Positions 11,541-62,548 of a stretch of DNA of 64,000 bases are shown piece after piece; position 1 is the stretch's first letter; the number at the start of each line of letters is the position of its first letter. The notes beneath the pieces were generated by a model. It searched no databases and was not told the DNA's origin. It saw only the letters and a program-made list of their open reading frames with translations. Made by a program: the position numbers and the translations under genes. The stretch comes from Octopus bimaculoides (taxonomy: Eukaryota): positions 7,337,349-7,401,348 of the forward strand of contig NC_069003.1 of NCBI RefSeq assembly GCF_001194135.2, written 5' to 3'.

Positions 11541-11805
11541 TGAGGCACCTTGGGCCAACCAAAGCCTTGTGAATAGATTTGGTAGACGGAAACTGAAAGA
11601 AGCCTATCGTGTATCATCATATCATAATCAGTTAGTGTCCGTTTTCCATGCTGACATGGCTTAGACAGTTTGATTGGGACTGGTAAGTTGGAGTAGCTGC
11701 ACCAGGCTCCAGTTTGATTTGGCTTCGTTTTTACAGCCAGATGCCCTTCCTAATGCCAACCACTCCAAGAGTGTAGTGGGTGCTTTTACGTGCCACTAGC
11801 ATGAT
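11540..11805. mobile_element. SINE-A fragment (+) adjoining a family-C tail (-)
   Basis: ccaaagccttgtgaatagatttggtagacggaaactgaaagaagcc, then catcat...tttccatgctgacatgg...gatgcccttcctaatgccaaccactcc. Confidence 0.8.
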
Positions 11806-15762: not shown

Positions 15763-16050
15763 CTACAGCTGGATGCCCTTCCTAACGCCAACCGCTCAGA
15801 GAGTGTAGTGGGTGCTTTTACGTGTCACCCGCACGAAGGCCAGTCAGGCGGTACTGGCAACGGCCACGCTCAAAATGGTGTATTTTATGTGCCACCCGCA
15901 CAAGAGCCAGTCCAGGGGCACTGGCAACGATCTTGCTCGAAAATCCTTACACATGTCACGGGCACAAGTGCCAGGAAGGCGACGCTGGGCACAGGTGCTA
16001 TCCCGATTTCGCTATTCGCTTGCCCCAATAAGTCTTCGCAAGCTGAGTTT
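15763..16050 (-). mobile_element. Family C RTE-tailed retroposon with long 5' repeat region
   Basis: ctggatgcccttcctaacgccaacc...gtgggtgcttttacgtgtcac plus repeated gtgccacc.gcac units. Confidence 0.85.
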
Positions 16051-18250: not shown

Positions 18251-18640
18251 TTTAGATAAAGTACTTTAGATGAAAAGAGCTTATAGAATTTTCATTAGAT
18301 TTCTAAAGCATAGAAATCAATAAATGCAACAATAATTGTACCATTTCAAATCTTTGACATGACAGTTTTTGTAAAAAACCACACACATACTAACACACAC
18401 ACAAACATGCAGACTCACAGAAGTGCCTATACCACTGCCTGTTATAGTGCACACTATGATCAGTCCTCAGCTAGGCTGCATGCATGGTACATGAGAAGCA
18501 GGAGAGCTGTATGTCGTGTCTGATGTTGAATTGGCAAGCCAGAGATCTGTACCAGGCTTGTCAGCTTTTCAAACCATCCGACCCATGCCAGCATGGAAAA
18601 TGGACTTTAAATGATGATGATCCTTATGTAACACCATCTA

Positions 18641-21500: not shown

Positions 21501-22269
21501 CACTAGAGAGATGGAAATACAATAGAGAAAGAGAGACAGACATGATAAACAGATAAAAAGATAGACAGAGATATTAGACTGACAAAGACAGATAGATAGG
21601 TGTCACAGCTAGAAGCAGATATCAAAGGAAAGAGTGAGAGAGAGAGAGAGAGAGAGAAAGAGATGCTAGAGAGACAGAAATATGATAGAAAGAGAGAGAA
21701 AGAGATAGACAGGCAGATAGACAAAGAGAGGCTTACAGCAGATACTGATGTGCAATGGATATATAGATAACTGTATAAAACTCAGAAAGCTAAACCCAAC
21801 TTACTAATCTCTTTTCTAAATAACCTGCCCACACAGATTTACAAAAAGAAAAAAAAAGAAAACCACCAGATAAATCAGATGGCAAAAGGAAACATGCCTT
21901 GACCTCCATATTACACCATATTCAGAAAAAAGCACAATGTAGCTGAGTGTGGATTAATTCCAGAATTCCAGAATGGATGTCTTCAGACCTTGTTTGCACT
22001 TCAGGAAATTCCTTCTGGCATCCTGGGACCAAGATGAATAACTAAGTTGATTATGAATAACAGCCAAAGGGAGACAATACCCTGCTGTTGATAGAGTAAT
22101 GGAGACTTATTCTCCTCCATTTTCTAGAGAGGCCACTTGCAACAGAGGCCATATGCCAATGGATATTGGGGTCTGATGATAAGCTGTATTGTGTTTTATG
22201 AACATGAAAACCAGGGTAATCTCATAGACCGGCCTTATCTATCTCTCTCTCTATGTATGTACATACACG

Positions 22270-22552
22270 TAAAATACACCATTTGAGCGTGGCCGTTGCC
22301 AGTACTGCCTGACTGGCCTTCGTGCCGGTGGCACATAAAAGCACCCACTACACTCTCGGAGTGGTTGGTGTTAGGAAGGGCATCCAGCTGAAGAAACTCT
22401 ACCAAATCNNNNNNNNNNAGGGCATCCAGCTGAAGAAACTCTACCAAATCAGATTGGAGCCTGGTGTAGCCATCTGGTTTCACCAGTCCTCAGTCAAATC
22501 GTCCAACCCATGCTAGCATGGAAAGCGGATGTTAAACGATGATGATGATGAT
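22270..22552 (+). mobile_element. Family C retroposon (internal duplication across a 10-N gap)
   Basis: Ends ccaacccatgctagcatggaaagcggatgttaaacgatgatgatg. Confidence 0.9.
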
Positions 22553-37002: not shown

Positions 37003-37190
37003 AATCTGATCTGGCAGTTTCTACAGCTGGATGCCCTTCCTAATGCCAACCACTCCGAGAGTGTAGTGGGTGCTTTTACGTGCTACCGGCATGAGGGCCA
37101 GTCACACGGTACTGGCTACGACCACACTCAAAATGGTGTTTTTTATGTGCCACCTGCCCAGGTGCCAGTCCAGCGGCACTGGCAACGACC
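37003..37190 (-). mobile_element. Family C fragment
   Basis: atctgatctggcagtttctacagctggatgcccttcc. Confidence 0.85.
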
Positions 37191-37738
37191 TCATATATAT
37201 ATATATATTTACCATGTGAACTATGATGAAAAAAATATGAGAAAGATATGGTAGATAGTTTTTTTTTTTGTGCAGGGGTTCCTTGAGACATGTAATTTAT
37301 TTTAAGGGTTACACAAGGGTAAAAAGGTTGGGGTAACGCTGCCCTAAACCACAACATGTGTGTCCTATGAGACACCATCACCATTCAATGCCCACTTTTC
37401 TATTCCTGCATGGGTCAGATGGAATTGTTTTGAGGAATGCATGAGTCTATATAACAATGTCAATAAAAAGAATCACAAAATTTCAATGAATTTAGGCCTA
37501 CAAAGAAAAATTCTAAATATTAACAATAATGAGAATAATAAATGTTGTTGTTGTTTTAGTCTTGTGTTGTTTATAAGCATTGAAATAGCTGCTTTTGTTT
37601 GCCTGCTTCCAGAAGCCATTAGCAGTTGAAATATATTTGAATGATTACAGCTTTGTTTATCGATGTTAAAATGAAGTTTCCAGCAATAAAGCATTCAACT
37701 TGTAGTGATTATTACCCCGTCATTCTTCCATACTAACT

Positions 37739-38245: not shown

Positions 38246-38774
38246 TAATAATAATAATAATAAGAAGAAGAAGAAGAATCAGTGTTTTAACATCCTCTTT
38301 TCCATGCTTGCATGGGTTGGATAGAATTTATTGAGGTTGATTTTCTATGGCTGGATGCCCTTCCTGTCAACAACCCTCACCTGATTCTAAACAGAGGAAT
38401 ATTCCTCCATAACCAGACGCTTTTGCAAAATGCTGGAAATAAATGACATTCATTCACAACAATCAAATGATGTCAAGACGAGGTGACACAATCACTCACA
38501 CACACACACACAACAGGCTTCTTTTAGTTTCCATCTACCAAATCGACTCACAAGGCTATGGTTGGCCTAGGATTACAGCAGAAAACATCTCAAGGTGCCA
38601 CATGGTGGGACTGAACCAGAAACCATGCGGCTAGGAAACACACTTCTTAACCACAGCCATCCTTATTTCTAATTTTGCTGAAGTGTTAATGCAATTAGAA
38701 GAACGACGAATGCAAAACCTAATAGAATTAGTGCCACCATTTATATTTTCTTTTGTTTTATATTTTTGTTTAAG

Positions 38775-39422: not shown

Positions 39423-39458
<36 letters not shown>

Positions 39459-39640
39459 GTCGTTTAACGTCCGCTTTCCATGCTAGCATGGGTTGGACGA
39501 TTTGACTGAGGATTGGCAAGCCAGCAGGCTGCACCAGGCTCCAATCTGATCTGGCAGAGTTTCTACAGCTGGATGCCCTTCCTAACGCCAAACACTCCGA
39601 GAGTGTAGTAGGTGCTTTTACGTGCCACTGGCACAAGGGT
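39423..39640 (-). mobile_element. Family C, young copy with (CAT)n
   Basis: catcatcgtcgtttaacgtccgctttccatgctagc. Confidence 0.9.
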
Positions 39641-48600: not shown

Positions 48601-50134
48601 ATCATCATTCAAAACAGTTAAAGACATCGAAAGAGATGGTGGAGGTCAGATGTGCAGATGCTGGGTCTCGCAAGATAAGATTACAATATAAGACCATGAA
48701 GATTTATAGTATGTTATACATGCTACAAACATAGCCAACCCACATGGAAAATTAACTATTAAAATAATAAAGATGATGATAATGATGATAAGATACATAT
48801 TCCAAAGGTCAAGTTTTTCCTTTTTTGTTCCTTGGCTTTTAATATGATCAACATGGTCTAGAGAAAGTCAATTAAGGGAAATCTCCTCATCTCTTCTGGA
48901 ATTCTTACTCCTGAATGTACCTCAGCATTAGGAGCCACCAAGGCACTTTTTTTCTTGTAATTACTCAGCATGCTAGAAATGGCAGCTAAATCTACCTTGA
49001 ATTAAAGGGAAAGGGAGAAAGTTCCCATCCAAGGCACAGGTTGTTTATGGAAGACCAGCAGTCACCCATGCATACCAGCCTCCCCTCTCCATGCCGCTAA
49101 TGTTATCCAAGGGAAAGGCAAGGGCCGATACATCTTGGTACTGGTGATGTTGGAACTTATTTCTACAGATGAGTGAACTGGAGCAACATGAAATAAAGTG
49201 TCTTGCTCAAGCACACAACACACAGCCTGGCCCAGGAATCAAAGAAGCAGATCTGTGGTACTGAGCAGAATATTTGTTGTAGCCCATCTTTTACACAAAG
49301 ACAAAACATATGCACGTCAACACTTCCAATCAGTTAAGATCAGAAGCCATGAGAGCCACTGCCTGGTATTGCATCAGGACATCTGCCTTGAATTATACAT
49401 CGCCATACTGTGAGGAATAATCTTGATAAATCTCAGAGCTTAGTTGTCACTCCCAAGTGAGTCCAACTTGGTCACATGCACTATGTTATTATTATTACTA
49501 AAAATTTCAGGCCTTGTGCCTATAACAGAAAAGATTATTAAGGCGGTGAGCTGGCAGAATCGTTAGCACGCCGGGCGAAATGCTTAGCGGTATTCCGTCT
49601 GTCTTCACGTTCTGAGTTCAATTTCCGCCGAGGTCGACTTTGCCTTTCATCTTTATGAAAGAAGCCCATCATTACATATATATAATCTACATGTGTGTGG
49701 CTATGTGTCTATGTTTGTTCTACACCACCACTTGACAACTAGTGTTGGTGTGTTTACGCCCCTGTAACTTTGTGGTTCAGCAAATGTGACTGATAGAATA
49801 AGTACTAGACTTTAAAAAAAAATATATATAAATACTGTGGTAGATTCCTTCAATTAAAAATTCAAGACAGTGCCCCAGCCTGGCCACAGTGAAATGACTG
49901 AAACAAGTAGAAAGACAAATAAATAAATAAATAATCATCTTTGATCTGAAAGAGAGTTCGTCACAGATTACTCAAGAAACACTTCATTGTAAACGATAAT
50001 TACGATCTTGTCTGACACTAATTATAACGATGCCAGCTGCTGCCATACTTCTTCCTAGACAATACAGCACACAGGTGCCCAGGAGTAAATATTTTGTGCC
50101 TAATGTTTAAACCAACATTTTGTAGAGTCTGCCC

Positions 50135-50945
50135 TTATCATCATCATCCTTTAGCATCTGTTTTCCATGCTGGCATGGGTTAGAGGGTTTGATTGGAACT
50201 GGTCAGCCAGTGAGCTGCACCAGGCTACAATCTGTTTTGGCTTCGTTTCAACTGCTAGATGCCCTTCCTAATGCCAACCACTCTGTATTGTACTGAGTAC
50301 CTCTCGCGTGTCACTGGCACGGGTGCCTCCTATAGTGTGCTGGGTACTTCTCAAGTGTCACCAGCATGGGTGCCTCTTACGTGTCACCAACACAGATGCC
50401 TCTTACATGTCATTGGCATGGGTGTGTCTCACGTGTCACCTGCACAGGTGTCTGCTATGTGTCACTGGCACAAGTGCCTCTCACGTGTCACTGACACAGC
50501 TGCCTCTTACATGTCACCAGCATGAGTACCTCCCATGTGTCACCTGCACAGGTGCCTCTTAAATGTCACCGGTACAGGTGCCTCCCATGTGTCACTGGCA
50601 TGGGTGCCTCCCACATGTCACCAGCACGGTTGCCTCCCCCGTGTCACTGGCATGGGTGCTTTCCATGTGTCACTGGCACAGGTGCCTTCCATGTCACTGG
50701 TACGGGTGCCTCCCACGTGTCACGGGCACGAGTGCCTCTCATGGGTCACCAGCACAGGTGCCTCATATGTGTCACAAGCACAGGTGTCCTTTACGTATCA
50801 CAGGCACAGATGCCATTTTTTATATGTTACAGACACAGGCGCCTTTTACATGTCACAGGCACGACTGCCTTTTACAGGTTTCCAGCATGTATATTTCCTA
50901 CTTGTCACTGGCATGGGTGCCCCTCACAGGTCACCAGCCTGTGGC
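50135..50945 (-). mobile_element. Family C tail carrying about 25 copies of a 24-28-bp palindromic unit
   Basis: Tail 50135-50290, then gtgtcac(t/c)(g/a)gcac(a/g)ggtgcctc..a(c/t) repeated to about 50940. Confidence 0.9.
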
Positions 50946-51894
50946 TTTTGATAATAATCACGGAGGTAAATTGTACTATAAACTGCTGATGTTGAAAGTG
51001 AACATGGCTATAACTCATTGGTTTTATATTTCACATTTATTTGTATACAATGTTACATATCTTGAGATTTTCAAGCTAAGCCATTTTCATTATTAAAATA
51101 GAATTAAATTTTGAAATGAAATCACAAAAAAAAAAAGCTGTAGACGAAATCTATTATTTGTTTGAATATAATATACTTGAATAATTTTTGCTTAATTAAA
51201 TACATAAATTATTACAGTTCATCTTAAAGTCACCTATATTAATTATAATTCTAAAGTAAATTTTATATTTCAACGAGAAATAAACTTGAGAGCTTCTTGA
51301 AATATTATTATGTATTTACAAATCATTAGAAATGAATAACAATAAAAAAAAAAAATGTAGAAAAACTTTGGAATGAATTAGAATTATTTGCTGCAATTCA
51401 AAATNNNNNNNNNNNNNNNNNNNNNNNNNNNNNNNNNNNNNNNNNNNNNNNNNNNNNNNNNNNNNNNNNNNNNNNNNNNNNNNNNNNNNNNNNNNNNNNN
51501 NNNNNNNNNNNNNNNNNNNNNNNNNNNNNNNNNNNNNNNNNNNNNNNNNNNNNNNNNNNNNNNNNNNNNNNNNNNNNNNNNNNNNNNNNNNNNNNNNNNN
51601 NNNNNNNNNNNNNNNNNNNNNNNNNNNNNNNNNNNNNNNNNNNNNNNNNNNNNNNNNNNAAATACATTAATAAGTATATATGAATAGATAAATAAATAAA
51701 TAAAATAGAGATTAAAATTTGGAAATTGAGCTTAAGGATTTTTAATTAGGTAATGATCTAAATAAACAGTTTCAACAAGCGTTCATTTTCGTAGCAGATA
51801 ATTACTTGAAAAATGATTAAGAGTTGGTGACAGGATGGGCATTTGGTTGTAAAAGTCCTTCCTCAAATAGCATGATAAAACATATGAGCAGTTA

Positions 51895-51928
<34 letters not shown>

Positions 51929-52606
51929 CTTTTGGTAGATGGAAGCAGAAAGAAGCCTGTCAAGACACCTGTTTCTGTCTCACTCTAACCTTTCATCATC
52001 TGACACAAGATGATCTTCTCCAATGCTACATCCTCTCTCAAAGGACTTTTGTCTTGCAAGTGCTGGTGCCACATAAAAAGTGTCCAGTCTACACCGTAAA
52101 GAGGTTGATGTTTCGAAGAGCATCCAGCAGTAAAAGCCACGTCAAAACAAACACATGCCAGCACTGAAAGCAGACGTTAAACAATGATGGTGATGGTGAT
52201 AATGATGTGGGTGTGCATGTGTATATGTATACATGTATGTATGTATACACGTGTGTGTGTTTGTTGCCCACCACTGCTTGACAAATGGTGACTCCAGAGC
52301 TTATAGTAGAAGATGCTTGCCCAAGGTGTCATACAGTGGGACTGAACCTGGAAGTGTGTTGTTGGGAAGCAAACTTATCATGCAGCCATGCCTGTGCCTA
52401 TGTTTAATATAGTGGCCATATTTGGGTTATCTGCCTTACCGGTGGTGTCGATGAGTGTAATAAGGGCGGCCCAGGATTACATTATTCAAAGGGGATAACC
52501 ATCAGTGTGAAGGATTTCTTATCATCTTTTCATAAGTGCTTTCTCCTATAGCCCTGGGCTGATTAATACCTCGTGAATGAATTTGATAAATTAAGTGGAA
52601 GACCTT

Positions 52607-53285: not shown

Positions 53286-54009
53286 ATTTCATGTCCATTG
53301 TCCATGCTGGCATGGGTTGTTAGTATAAATCTATAATGTTCACCAACACTGTACAATGACAGACTGCTGTAATATTTCATACGACAGCCCTTTCTCTGTT
53401 TAGCTTCAGACAGTTATTAGCTATCAACCAAACCACCACAAAAAAGCTATAACAGTTTTTAGATGCATGATTTTTTCTGAGAAAAATGTATATTTCATGA
53501 TAGAGGGAAACACGAAATTGTTCATAGAATTAATCGCAATTATTAAAAAAAAATAAAAATAAATAAATAAAACAGAATAAAAAAAAAATGAAATCAAACA
53601 TTATTTTCTTTGATAGTCAATAGTACATTAACATAATAGCCATTGAATGGTACTCAAGTGTTAACAGGCTCACAACAACACTACGCACCTATGTAAACTA
53701 CGCAAGAGACACGGTACACCTACATAATATTAGTTGACGACATACCTATATCTGATATCAGATGGCAACACACCTACATTATAGACATTAGATTTTGTGA
53801 ATATTATAATATTTCTGTTAATGTCATTGCAAAGATTTCTTGTTTCTTTCTTTTTTTTTTCATCTTCCGCTGATCGTGATGAAGTAATGTACACAGGCTC
53901 AAATGTTAACAATTACATCAACGTTGTTTGATTCTAGTCTAGAAATTATTTTAGTAACCACTTGTTACTATAATAAACAGAGGCTGATATTATAATTGTG
54001 TCTTTCATA

Positions 54010-55538: not shown

Positions 55539-56582
55539 NNNNNNNNNNNNNNNNNNNNNNNNNNNNNNNNNNNNNNNNNNNNNNNNNNNNNNNNNNNNNN
55601 NNNNNNNNNNNNNNNNNNNNNNNNNNNNNNNNNNNNNNNNNNNNNNNNNNNNNNNNNNNNNNNNNNNNNNNNNNNNNNNNNNNNNNNNNNNNNNNNNNNN
55701 NNNNNNNNNNNNNNNNNNNNNNNNNNNNNNNNNNNNNNNNNNNNNNNNNNNNNNNNNNNNNNNNNNNNNNNNNNNNNNNNNNNNNNNNNNNNNNNNNNNN
55801 NNNNNNNNNNNNNNNNNNNNNNNNNNNNNNNNNNNNNNNNNNNNNNNNNNNNNNNNNNNNNNNNNNNNNNNNNNNNNNNNNNNNNNNNNNNNNNNNNNNN
55901 NNNNNNNNNNNNNNNNNNATATATATATAAACATTGTTATTAGTTTTGCTAATTTAGTAGTTTTGTATTCGCAGCCACATGGTTTCAAGTCCAACTTTAC
56001 TGCATAGCACTTTGGACAACCCTTGGGGGCACAAATGCCTTATGAGTGAATTTGGCAAATGGAAACAGTAAAGCAGCCCATTGTGTGTGATGTGTTGTGA
56101 CATTTGCACACCAATTGTAAACATTGTTACCATTGATGCAAAAACGGTGTCCTTTGTTGGCAATCTTCTGTGAAAATATATCTATCCACAGAACTGTTCA
56201 TATTTGAAGTATTAGGGAAAAATATTACCAGTCTTGGAAACATGCAAGGGTTGGCAACAGGACGAGTATTTCATTCATCATCATCTATACCATTTAACAT
56301 CTGTTTTACCATGCTAGCATGGGTTGGACAGTTTGACAGGAGATGATCAGTCACAGAGTTGCCCAGTCTCCAAATATCTGTTTTAGTATGGTTTCTATGG
56401 CTGTATGCCCTTCCCAATGCCAACCACTTTACAGAGTGTACTGGGTGCTTTTTAAGTGGTACTGGCATGGGTGCTCTTATGTGGCACCAGCACAAATGCT
56501 TTTTACGTTGCATTGGCACAGTAAATAGATTTTTGCCCCAATGAGTTTCATTTGATGCATGCAAACCTAGAAAAATAAATGA

Positions 56583-57664: not shown

Positions 57665-57822
57665 ATCATCATCATCGTGTAACGTCCGCTTTCCATGCTG
57701 GCAGGGGTTGGATGATTTGACTGAGGATTGGCAAGCTAGAAGGTTGCACCAGGCTCCAATCTGATCTGGCAGAGTTTCTACAGCTAGATGCCCTTCCTAA
57801 CGCCAACCACTCCGAGAGTGTA

Positions 57823-58229: not shown

Positions 58230-59690
58230 GAAGATCAGATATGTGAGGTGTTTAAGATGGTAAGACAAAGTACCAGAGGAAGCCAAGATGTCATTAAAGA
58301 GAAGTGTATCCTAAATGATGGAGGCACACTCGTCCTTTCAGCTGATGGAAAGAAAGAGGCTGAGAAGTGCTATTACGACAGGTTACTGAATGAGGAGAAC
58401 ACATGGGAGAAAGAGGCTCCACTTGAAGCTGACCCAACAGAGGGACTGGTTATTCAAGTTGACAGCAGCTTGGCAGACAGAAAGATTTAAGATATAAAGG
58501 TAAGGAAAGCGCCAGGCCTATCAGGGATAGTTTCTGAGATGCTTAACCCTTTAGCATTTAGATTAGTTTGTGAAATGTAATGTTTGTTTATTTGCATTGT
58601 TTATTTGCATTATTTTTGCTGCTACACTCATGTCACTGGTTCAAAATTTTGCTATTGTTTTCATTACAAGACATTGTAAGAGATTCTGATGAAGGTTAAA
58701 CACATTTAAACATCAAAGAATGTTATTGCCCTGACATTTTTCAGCTTTTCCAAAAGTTACAGCACATATCTTGTACATACGTGTATGTGCGCATGTGTGT
58801 ATTGTTGTGGCATAAATGTACATATGTATGTATATATCATATATGCAAATATATCATCAATGAACAGTCTCATAGCTTTTAAATTTCAATGGTATGATTG
58901 TTTATTTTTAAAATGACATAGCAGGGTATGTGTATGAAGCCAGATCTTCCTGGTTTGGAGATAAAACAGGTAGGATATTTTGGCCGGATATGACTAAAAG
59001 TTAAAATATCTGGCAATGTAGGAGACATGGTAGTTGCCTGGATAATTAATCCAGTAATAAACGAAGTCGTCATATCTAATGATTGCTGTAGCAATATTAT
59101 TAACGTAAACTGTTACAAGGACAAAGAAGATGTATTAGAGAGAGGTAATTAGAGAGGCATCAGATTGTTGGAACAGGTGATGAAGGTCATGGAAAAGTCA
59201 TAGCACGATTGATCAGCAACGGAATTAATTTAAACGAGATGCAGTTCAGCTTTATGCCTGGAAGATGAACCACAAATGCCATCATTGTAGTGAGGTGACT
59301 GCAGAAGTACTTAGCTAAACACAAGCCACTGTAACAATAGTCAGCTTGAAGAAGGCTTTGACAAAGTGCCACACTTTGTAATCAGACTGTAGTTAACTAG
59401 GAGTAAATGAATGACTTGTGAGGACTTTACTACAGGCTATGCTTAAAGACGCAATTAATAAAGTGAGTCAGTAATGAACACATTGATGAATTTAGAACAA
59501 AGTTTAGGGGTGCACCAAGGCTCAGTCTTCAGCTCCCTCCTGTTCATTTAAGGCTAGGTACTTGTAGGAACTCATATGTTGATAACTCCATCCTTATAGT
59601 TGAAACTGTAACAGAATCAGAAAGGAAATTCGAGAGATGGAGGCAAAACCTGGAACTAAAAGGCCTCAAGGTGAAAGTAGCAAAGATTTG
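58230..59690 (+). mobile_element. RTE LINE ORF2 remnant (reverse transcriptase), split by MITE P1
   Basis: KAPGLSGIVSEML|KISG, CYK.K.D.LERGN*RGIRLL, MQFSFMPGR*TT.AI, LKKAFDKVP, RVHQGSV, KGLKVKVAK; many stops and frameshifts. Confidence 0.9.
58547..59000 (+). mobile_element. MITE P1 inserted at a TTAA in the RTE
   Basis: TTAA at 58543-58546 and 59001-59004; removing the insert restores gag atg ctt aaa ata tct ggc (EMLKISG). Confidence 0.9.
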
Positions 59691-60074
59691 TACTGGTGAC
59701 ATGTAAAACACACCCAGTACACTCTGTAGAGTGGTTGGCTGGCATTAGGGAGGGCATCCAGCCATAGAAACAAAGCCAAAACAGACTGAAGTCTGGTGCA
59801 GCTTTCCAACTTACCGGTTCCAGTCAAACCATCTAACCCATGCCAGGATGGAAAACAGATGCTAAAAGATTATGGTAATAAATTAAGAAAATAGAAAGTA
59901 TCCTGATTCCATTAAGGGGAAATGGCCTTGCTTGATATGTAGACAAGTAGGAAGTAGGAAATCCCTATGATATACCCAGTACAAATTATGGACACACAAA
60001 AGGTGCAGTGAAATCACAGGCAAGCTAACAGACAAAGCACACTGAATAACAACATAAATTTTCAACTAAATGTA

Positions 60075-62159: not shown

Positions 62160-62548
62160 TAACTCATTTGATACTAAGCTATCTGAGACTAAACTTGAAC
62201 TGATATAAATTTCTTGTTTTTAAGTGATGAATATTAAAATTTTCCATTGAAATTTCATGATTTATGTTCCAAACACCAGCTTAATACTATTAAAGTAATT
62301 TTACTAAATTCTTCTTAATTTGCAAAATTAATTAAACTCAAGTTGCAGGTGCCATTTAGAAAGCACCCTGTACACTCTGTAAAGTGGTTGGCATTAGAAA
62401 GGGCATCCAATCATAGAAACCATAGACAGTAGAACAGCTCCTGTTAAACTATCCAACCCACGCCAACATGGAAGACGGTTGTTAAAAAATGATGATCATG
62501 ATTATAGGCAATGTATTTCAACAGAAATATGGTAACAAAAGGGTTAAT
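62160..62548. mobile_element. MITE P2 interrupted by a family C fragment (62350-62497)
   Basis: TTAActcattt start and ggtaacaaaagggTTAA end. Confidence 0.55.

What the first reader, a model, noticed from the sequence alone, without database searches (positions are those of the whole stretch)
50135..50945. Retroposon family carrying an expandable array of palindromic 26-bp units
Family C has a constant RTE-like 3' part, but its 5' part is a variable array whose unit has a GGCAC-NN-GTGCC palindromic core. Approximate counts: 1-3 units in most copies, about 6 at 30690, about 10 at 32680 and about 25 here. No Pol III head is visible, so how it is transcribed is unclear. The transcript would be a chain of stem-loops with many alternative pairings. 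It could be a retroposing minisatellite, or an array of binding sites for a dimeric factor or zinc-finger protein. This is the least easily explained structure in the window.
Basis: partly seen in the sequence, partly recalled or inferred. Interest (0 to 1): 0.7.

Follow-up and report, generated by a model that had tools for sequence, protein, structure and literature searches.

The report
Minisatellite grown inside an octopus SINE
A short octopus-type retroposon has had its own 26-bp 5' motif multiplied into a decaying array of about 25 tandem copies; this is an ordinary transposon-derived minisatellite, with no sign that its palindrome is maintained or functional.

Summary
On the minus strand, 50297-50938 is 24.5 head-to-tail 26-bp units. 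They are joined to a ~165-bp constant part (50135-50296) that ends in (GAT)n. About 15 related copies lie in the window, carrying 0, 1, 3, 10.9 or 24.5 such units. The copy near 30700 has 66-bp units instead: the 26-bp core plus a 40-bp insert.

The constant part looks like a modular SINE body. It has a deeply conserved block (GGTTGGCRTTAGGAAGGGCATC), also found in 20 unrelated metagenome contigs and probably the Nin-DC/Deu domain. It also has a tail stem-loop kept by compensatory changes.

Every unit in the window lies directly 5' of a constant part, in one orientation. Both long arrays end distally at about the unit phase where single-unit copies begin, so the arrays look internal to the element.

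The palindrome shows no sign of constraint:
- It is perfect in only 4 of 23 units.
- It is no better conserved than the rest of the unit.
- It shows no covariation.
- The array RNA folds no better than shuffles.

Variation is mainly CpG decay. No Pol III head was found. Best reading: a neutral minisatellite derived from a transposable element. Interest is low to moderate.

The parts
50297..50938 (-). Array of 24.5 tandem 26-bp units. The inferred ancestral unit is GGCACCCGTGCCGGTGACACGTGAGA. The 5'-most units are the most degenerate.
   Evidence: TRF; wrap-around alignment; per-position conservation; neighbour effect.
50135..50296 (-). Constant part of this copy: a conserved central block, a variable middle, a tail stem-loop and a (GAT)n end.
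   Evidence: blastn against the window; alignment A1.
50254..50279 (-). [quoted passage not shown]
   Evidence: 17 matches in the window vs 0.09 expected. The same block occurs in 20 metagenome contigs from other organisms. The domain name rests on memory and on literature context.
50165..50178 (-). Tail stem-loop CCATGC-CA-GCATGG, just upstream of the (GAT)n end.
   Evidence: 86.5% of cells paired vs 18-38% when the partner is slid. 4 of 6 pairs show compensatory changes. 0 of 500 shuffles reach the covariation score.
50137..50148 (-). (GAT)4 microsatellite tail, the 3' end of the element.
   Evidence: Sequence; all full copies end in GAT/ATG repeats.
32692..32973 (+). Second long array: 10.9 units of 26 bp with array-specific variants (GTGATGCAT) and a weak 3-unit periodicity.
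   Evidence: TRF; wrap-around alignment; lag profile.
32974..33143 (+). Constant part and (ATG)n tail of the copy with 10.9 units.
30708..30999 (+). 4.4 units of about 66 bp (26-bp core plus 40-bp insert) in a subfamily-A copy. The unit variants come in a fixed order.
   Evidence: TRF period 66. The order of variants is shared with the copies at 15763-15998, 37000-37192 and 22267-22552.
31000..31156 (+). Constant part and (GAT)n tail of the subfamily-A copy.
56271..56520 (-). Copy with 3 units of 26 bp.
59688..59881 (+). Closest relative of the 50135 copy (83.6% identity) with a single unit.
11613..11803 (-). Single-unit copy.
39426..39634 (-). Single-unit copy of subfamily A with a long (GAT)n tail.
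62342..62505 (+). Single-unit copy with an internal deletion.
52060..52200 (+). Diverged single-unit copy with an internal deletion.
22267..22552 (+). 5'-truncated subfamily-A copy with a 10-N assembly gap inside.
15763..15998 (-). Subfamily-A copy with at least 3 long units. Its 3' part is lost in an N gap.
37000..37192 (-). Subfamily-A fragment, truncated at both the 5' and 3' ends.
57665..57822 (-). 5'-truncated copy with no unit, flanked on both sides by (TA)n.
25463..25620 (-). 5'-truncated copy with no unit, next to an N gap.

Best explanation
The locus is one old copy of a short, non-coding, SINE-like retroposon family from an octopus-type genome.

Anatomy of the family, 5' to 3':
- a family-specific 5' region that starts about (C)CGTGCCGGTG(G/A)CACGTAAAAGCACC;
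- a deeply conserved central block (GGTTGGCRTTAGGAAGGGCATC...), most likely the Nin-DC/Deu SINE domain;
- a tail with a conserved stem-loop, ending in (GAT)n. This is the kind of tail that a LINE reverse transcriptase copies, possibly one of the RTE clade.

How the array arose: the 26-bp motif at the 5' end is prone to tandem duplication. In most copies it is present once. In one subfamily a 66-bp version is present about 4 times in a fixed order and is retroposed as part of the element. In two lineages the 26-bp motif grew by stepwise local duplication (replication slippage or unequal exchange) to 10.9 and 24.5 copies.

The growth is old. It happened either in the source gene or soon after insertion. 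Since then the units have decayed neutrally, mainly by CpG-to-TpG/CpA transitions.

The palindrome is a feature of the ancestral motif. It may help slippage, but it is not maintained.

Shown: the anatomy, the tie between array and element, the independence of the two arrays, the neutral decay, and the lack of special RNA structure. Inferred: the duplication mechanism, its timing, and the LINE partner.
For: - Array and counts.
- All 45 unit matches lie directly 5' of a constant part in the same orientation, against 0 in shuffles.
- The distal ends of both long arrays fall at unit phase ~10. The nine complete-looking copies start within phases 4-14; chance is about 0.01 by my own estimate.
- Ordered 66-bp unit variants are shared by four copies.
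- The closest relative of this copy, at 59688-59881, has one unit.
- Array-specific variants: non-CpG identity is 0.80/0.79 within arrays and 0.75 between them.
- Neighbouring units are more alike at non-CpG sites (0.822 vs 0.798, p=0.007), declining to 0.77 at lag 16.
- 49 substitutions are C>T or G>A transitions at the six CpG positions. Only 13 of 69 ancestral CpGs are retained. By eye, about 1 of 7 inferred CpGs in the constant part is retained.
- The core is no better conserved than the rest (Fisher p=0.47), shows no covariation, and the array RNA has z=-0.38.
- The conserved block occurs in 20 metagenome contigs.
- The tail stem-loop covaries.
- The family is present in O. vulgaris transcript contigs.
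- tRNA-Deu SINEs are a main octopus SINE class.
- SINE-derived minisatellites formed by slippage are a known phenomenon.
Against: - No target-site duplication could be found for this copy or most others. So the array's position inside the inserted unit rests on association, orientation and phase, not on TSDs.
- Only about 16 copies from one 64-kb window were available. Subfamily consensus sequences and ages are therefore rough.
- The identification as Nin-DC/Deu could not be checked against a reference consensus.
- No promoter of any kind was identified, so how the family is transcribed is unexplained.
- Whether the expansion came before or after insertion cannot be separated with these data.
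Confidence: 0.7

Rival explanations
1. The copies are a truncation series. A master element carries a long 26-bp array, and copies with 1, 3, 11 and 25 units are 5'-truncated reverse transcripts of it.
For: Subfamily-A copies are plainly 5'-truncated at scattered points (22267, 37192, 15998, 57822, 25620). That is usual for LINE-driven retroposition.
Against: - Nine copies start within a narrow range of unit phases instead of at random positions.
- The two long arrays have different array-specific variants and no shared unit order.
- The nearest relative of the 24.5-unit copy has one unit.
Confidence: 0.1
2. The array is added during retroposition. When the reverse transcriptase reaches the RNA 5' end, it jumps back by microhomology and recopies the terminal 26 nt. 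Each event would then give a new unit number.
For: - The repeated unit is the 5'-terminal segment of the element.
- All arrays keep the 5' end phase.
- Template jumping by non-LTR reverse transcriptases is established (my own knowledge; not tested here).
Against: - Units within an array differ by about 20% even at non-CpG sites, and show a distance-dependent similarity gradient. That fits stepwise DNA-level duplication over time better than a single burst.
- Most copies have exactly one unit.
Confidence: 0.08
3. The array is an independent satellite or minisatellite that happened to be the insertion target of the retroposon.
For: No TSDs could be found to bracket the array.
Against: - All 45 unit matches at 11 loci lie next to a constant part, always 5' of it and in the same orientation. 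No stand-alone array occurs in 64 kb.
- Single-unit copies carry the same motif at their 5' end.
- The distal array edge falls within the phase range of the element's 5' end.
Confidence: 0.02
4. The units are functional. They would be either an array of binding sites for a dimeric or zinc-finger factor, or promoter 'monomers' like the tandem 5' monomers of mouse L1. The latter would let a head-less retroposon be transcribed and tolerate 5' truncation.
For: - The units sit at the extreme 5' end.
- No Pol III head or A/B boxes were found.
- The 5' ends cluster within one range of unit phases.
- Mollusc retroposons that share a partial Nin-DC domain but carry a LINE-derived head in place of a tRNA head have been described.
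Against: - No constraint is visible in the units. Decay is CpG-driven, the palindrome is intact in 4 of 23 units, and there is no covariation.
- Most copies carry only one unit.
- The best-conserved block is GTGACA, not the palindrome.
- This old copy says little about what active masters do.
Confidence: 0.1

Closest known systems
Nin-DC / Deu superfamily SINEs (annotated as 'SINE/tRNA-Deu' in octopus genomes)
   Same: - Short, non-coding, dispersed and modular.
- A central block that is near-identical in unrelated organisms.
- A LINE-type tail with a stem-loop and a microsatellite end.
- Several families in the same genome share the block and tail but differ in their 5' parts.
- The literature names tRNA-Deu as a main octopus SINE class.
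   Different: - No tRNA- or 5S-derived head and no A/B boxes in any copy here.
- The 5' part is instead a 26/66-bp tandem motif.
- The domain identity was recalled from memory, not tested against a reference consensus.
Minisatellites derived from SINE-internal sequence (Alu-derived and B1-derived minisatellites)
   Same: - A short segment of the element, present once in most copies, is amplified head-to-tail at particular loci.
- Slippage or unequal exchange is the accepted mechanism (review).
- Similarity between neighbouring units and degenerate array edges are seen here.
   Different: - Here the amplified segment is the very 5' end of the element.
- 2 of about 16 copies in one window are expanded to 10 or more units, which suggests an unusually expansion-prone motif.
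- Population polymorphism is unknown.
SVA (SINE-VNTR-Alu) elements of hominids
   Same: A non-autonomous retroposon with an internal tandem region of variable length that is carried along during retroposition. Here this is shown for the 66-bp series.
   Different: - SVA is a composite of several elements with a central VNTR and a poly(A) tail, and is mobilised by L1.
- Here the repeat is 5'-terminal and the tail is (GAT)n.
- The long arrays look locus- or lineage-specific rather than inherited.
Tandem 5' monomers of mouse L1
   Same: Tandem units at the 5' end whose number varies between copies. The 5' ends fall at a preferred place within the unit.
   Different: L1 monomers are about 200 bp with shown promoter activity. 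Here the units are 26-66 bp, no promoter activity is known, and no constraint is visible.

Membership tests
SINE (canonical definition) | Short, non-autonomous, dispersed in many copies, with no coding capacity. | tested here: met
   About 16 copies of 140-800 bp in 64 kb. The ORFs across the array have no homologues.
SINE (canonical definition) | A 5' head derived from tRNA, 5S or 7SL with an internal Pol III promoter (A and B boxes). | tested here: not met
   ARAGORN found 0 genes. Rfam gave no tRNA/5S/7SL/U match even at E<=10 on the copies. No B box at <=2 mismatches and no consistent A box. A head could still exist in fuller copies elsewhere in the genome.
SINE (canonical definition) | A LINE-type 3' tail ending in a simple repeat. 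| tested here: met
   (GAT)n/(ATG)n ends. A conserved tail stem-loop with compensatory changes. The same tail occurs on other elements. The LINE partner was not identified.
SINE (canonical definition) | Target-site duplications flanking the copies. | tested here: inconclusive
   No TSD of 8 bp or more for most copies; one copy is flanked by (TA)n. The copies are about 17-24% diverged.
Nin-DC / Deu SINE superfamily | A central domain homologous to the Nin-DC/Deu consensus. | not testable with these tools
   No reference consensus was on hand. Indirect support: the 22-nt block recurs exactly in 20 contigs of other organisms, and homology extends about 35 nt and again into the tail. My memory of the zebrafish SINE3 sequence is only a lead.
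Nin-DC / Deu SINE superfamily | The domain is combined with variable heads and tails across families. | tested here: met
   A second family in the window (38270-38450, 27950-28150, 29650-29880) shares the block and tail with a different 5' part. The metagenome relatives carry (TG)n or (GAT)n tails.
Transposon-derived minisatellite | A head-to-tail array of a 10-100 bp unit that is present once in the parent element. | tested here: met
   24.5 and 10.9 units against a single unit in five copies.
Transposon-derived minisatellite | Growth by local duplication, seen as similarity between neighbours and array-specific variants. | tested here: met
   Neighbour effect p=0.007. Identity within arrays exceeds identity between them. 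There is a weak 3-unit periodicity at 32692-32973.
Transposon-derived minisatellite | Length polymorphism between individuals (a VNTR in the strict sense). | not testable with these tools
   There is only one haplotype in the window.
SVA-like retroposon with a transmitted VNTR | The tandem region is carried through retroposition. | tested here: inconclusive
   Met for the 66-bp series, whose ordered variants are shared by four copies. Not shown for the long 26-bp arrays.
Structured RNA / hairpin array | Folding beyond what composition gives, and compensatory changes in the stems. | tested here: not met
   z=-0.38 for the array. A single consensus unit has z=+0.6. The covariation score equals the shuffled mean. 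The tail hairpin serves as a positive contrast.
L1-type 5' promoter monomers | The units have promoter activity, and transcription starts at a fixed place within the unit. | not testable with these tools
   There is only the indirect clustering of 5' ends by phase.

The most novel reading that the evidence does not exclude
The 26/66-bp units are promoter monomers of a head-less Nin-DC/Deu-type retroposon, a SINE-sized analogue of the mouse L1 5' monomer array. Each unit would direct initiation at a fixed place in the neighbouring unit. That would explain why copies with 1 to 25 units all begin within a narrow range of unit phases and why no Pol III head is present. Arrays would be gained by duplication and lost by 5' truncation.
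Probability: 0.1. Interest if true: 0.6.

Novelty: new member of a known kind. Interest (0 to 1): 0.25.

Why it matters
SINEs are reported as the main repeat class of octopus genomes. Knowing that one family carries an expansion-prone 5' motif helps repeat annotation, because such arrays would otherwise be scored as unrelated tandem repeats. It also gives a likely source of many GC-rich minisatellites in an AT-rich genome.

One open point has wider interest: how a family with a conserved SINE body but no recognisable Pol III head is transcribed.

For this locus itself, nothing points to a function.

Tried and rejected
- Protein search with the 138-aa antisense ORF across the array: no homologues.
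- Pattern scans of genome contigs and viral contigs for octopus-type copies: nothing.
- Rfam scan of ten metagenome relatives for tRNA-like heads: nothing.
- Pfam scan of the longer ORFs in the window, looking for a LINE partner: nothing.
- The idea that the 40-bp insert of the 66-bp unit duplicates the start of the constant part: alignment is no better than shuffles.
- The idea that the 19-bp minisatellite at 32447-32669 derives from the 26-bp unit: not significant.
- The idea that the unit is a remnant of tRNA or 5S: no model match and no A/B boxes.
- TSD search: nothing usable.
- Higher-order repeats of 78 or 104 bp in this array, as suggested by TRF: the lag profile is flat.
- Searches of papers for printed sequences of the family or of the Nin-DC consensus: none found. 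The octopus genome paper is not held.
- The 'perfect' 175-nt inverted repeats reported by the repeat finder are runs of N.

Full report
WHAT IS THERE

The window is AT-rich (37% G+C), gapped eukaryotic sequence full of microsatellites and short interspersed repeats. Read on the minus strand, the region has three parts:
- a tandem array at 50938..50297;
- a constant segment of about 165 bp at 50296..50135;
- a (GAT)4 end.

TRF reports period 26 x 18 copies plus 2.4 more. A wrap-around alignment to the consensus unit resolves 24.5 units with few indels. The array has 55% G+C, against 22-40% in its flanks.

THE FAMILY

The constant segment matches about 15 other places in the window. Aligned, the copies fall into two groups:
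- subfamily A: ...GAAACTCTGCCAGATCAGATTGGAGCC...
- subfamily B: ...GAAAC(G/C)AAGCCAAAACAGA...

The number of 26-bp units upstream of the constant part varies widely:

| Units | Copies |
|---|---|
| 0 (5'-truncated) | 57665-57822, 25463-25620 |
| 1 | 11613-11803, 39426-39634, 59688-59881, 62342-62505, 52060-52200 |
| 3 | 56271-56520 |
| 10.9 | 32692-33143 |
| 24.5 | this locus |

It has 4.4 units of about 66 bp, each the same core plus a 40-bp insert. These long units come in a fixed order of distinguishable variants. The same order appears in the copies at 15763-15998, 37000-37192 and 22267-22552, which are truncated at different points. So in subfamily A the tandem region is part of the retroposed consensus.

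IS THE ARRAY PART OF THE ELEMENT?

A unit pattern that tolerates CpG decay, at <=5 mismatches, hits 45 times in the window and 0 times in shuffles. Every hit lies directly 5' of a constant part and in the same orientation. There is no stand-alone array.

Both long arrays end distally at unit phase ~10. Nine complete-looking copies begin within phases 4-14 of 26, about (C)CGTGCCGGTG. By my own estimate the chance of that clustering is about 0.01. Local alignments may favour starting at conserved blocks, so this figure is soft.

TSDs could not be found for this copy or most others, so the formal TSD test is inconclusive. Taken together, the evidence argues strongly against an independent satellite used as an insertion target.

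IS THE PALINDROME SPECIAL?

The inferred ancestral unit is GGCACCCGTGCCGGTGACACGTGAGA, with three CpGs. Of roughly 115 substitutions, 49 are C>T or G>A at those six positions, and only 13 of 69 CpGs survive. By eye from the family alignment, about 1 of 7 inferred CpGs in the constant part survives, which is a similar level of decay.

- The core GGCAC-NN-GTGCC is intact in 4 of 23 units.
- At non-CpG positions the core matches the consensus in 0.89 of cells and the rest of the unit in 0.855 (Fisher p=0.47). The best-kept block is GTGACA, at 0.95, and it lies outside the core.
- Counted over 29 units, the arms pair in 83% of cells, but the covariation score (0.184) equals the shuffled mean.
- The array RNA folds at -231 kcal/mol against -229 +/- 6 for dinucleotide shuffles, z=-0.38. 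A single consensus unit is no better than shuffles either.

The palindrome belongs to the ancestral motif and is decaying neutrally.

HOW THE ARRAY GREW

Mean pairwise unit identity is 0.72 overall and 0.80 at non-CpG sites. There is no 78- or 104-bp higher-order period.

Neighbouring units are slightly but significantly more alike at non-CpG sites (0.822 vs 0.798, p=0.007), falling to 0.77 at lag 16. The 5'-most units are the most degenerate.

The array at 32692 has its own variants (GTGATGCAT) and a weak 3-unit period. Identity between the two arrays (0.75 at non-CpG sites) is lower than within either. The nearest relative of this copy, at 59688, has one unit.

These features fit stepwise local duplication, by slippage or unequal exchange, occurring independently in two lineages. 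The growth dates from long ago, at or near the time of insertion. Whether it happened in a source gene or at the locus cannot be decided here.

WHAT THE CONSTANT PART IS

The 22-nt block GGTTGGCRTTAGGAAGGGCATC occurs exactly in 20 metagenome contigs, which clearly come from other eukaryotes. In an alignment, about 35 nt are shared by all of them. Several also share the last ~45 nt, with either (GAT)n or (TG)n ends.

That tail holds a 6-bp stem: CCATGC/GCATGG in the window's copies, CCAGGT/ACCTGG or CCGTAC/GTGCGG elsewhere. It is supported by compensatory changes: 86.5% of cells are paired against 18-38% when the partner is slid, and 0 of 500 shuffles reach the covariation score.

A second family in the window shares the block and tail but has another 5' part. 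Further elements share only the tail.

This is the modular build of SINE superfamilies. From memory, the block matches the Nin-DC/Deu domain (zebrafish SINE3 ...GGAAGGGCATCCGCTGCGTAAAAC...). The literature supports the context:
- Nin-DC is part of Deu and occurs in molluscs.
- tRNA-Deu is a main octopus SINE class.
- Microsatellite tails are typical of RTE, including octopus RTE-2_OV.

I could not test the block against a reference consensus, and no LINE lies in the window.

Two O. vulgaris transcript contigs in a paper's supplement carry the family. The window is therefore octopus or a close relative.

THE PROMOTER

No tRNA, 5S, 7SL or U-RNA similarity was found, and no A/B boxes. Fuller copies with a head may exist elsewhere. 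Head-less mollusc retroposons with a LINE-derived 5' end, sharing a partial Nin-DC domain, have been described.

VERDICT

This is a transposon-derived minisatellite inside a Nin-DC/Deu-type, SINE-like retroposon: a new member of a known kind (review). The most novel reading still open is that the units are promoter monomers. I put that at about 10%.

Noticed in passing
window 32447-32669: A young 19-bp minisatellite (TGTGGGAGTGATGTGGGGT x 11.7, 92% matches) abuts the 5' edge of the 26-bp array at 32692. It shows no significant similarity to the 26-bp unit, so the neighbourhood may simply be prone to tandem duplication.
   Followed up: partly
window 38270-38450 (-), 27950-28150 (-), 29650-29880 (+): A second retroposon family shares the conserved GGAAG(G/A)GCATCC block and the tail stem-loop but has a different 5' part with no 26-bp units. 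This is module shuffling within one superfamily.
   Followed up: partly
window 18569-18621, 25940-25979, 53298-53318: Only the last ~50 nt of the tail (stem-loop plus GAT repeat) is found on otherwise unrelated sequence. The tail is therefore a module shared with other elements, or with the unknown LINE partner.
   Followed up: partly
L001-L020 (metagenome contigs): Twenty contigs from public metagenomes carry the exact 22-nt conserved block. They look like eukaryotic host or contaminant DNA from several organisms, and some are the same locus assembled more than once. No tRNA-like head was detected in ten of them.
   Followed up: partly
window 50259-51096 (+): The antisense strand of the array has no stop codons in any frame, which gives overlapping ORFs of 138-177 aa. 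A protein search found no homologues, so these are a by-product of unit composition.
   Followed up: yes
window 25275-25449 and 31521-31695: The 'perfect' 175-nt inverted repeats listed by the repeat finder are runs of N next to (TC)n/(AG)n and (TA)n microsatellites. They are not real.
   Followed up: yes
window 22400-22450: The copy at 22267-22552 contains a 10-N gap flanked on both sides by the same ~30 bp (AGGGCATCCAGCTGAAGAAACTCTACCAAATC). This is probably an assembly or scaffolding overlap artefact.
   Followed up: no
window 31955-32076: Two more small tandem arrays lie close together: CATAAGTGCAAAAAAAGGT x 4.3 (96% matches) and AGAATTCT x 3. They lie upstream of an unrelated SINE copy at about 32235-32420.
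   Followed up: no
window 50071-50085: About 60 bp beyond the 3' end of the element, the flank contains CACAGGTGCCCAGG, which resembles the unit core on the opposite strand. It is probably chance.
   Followed up: no
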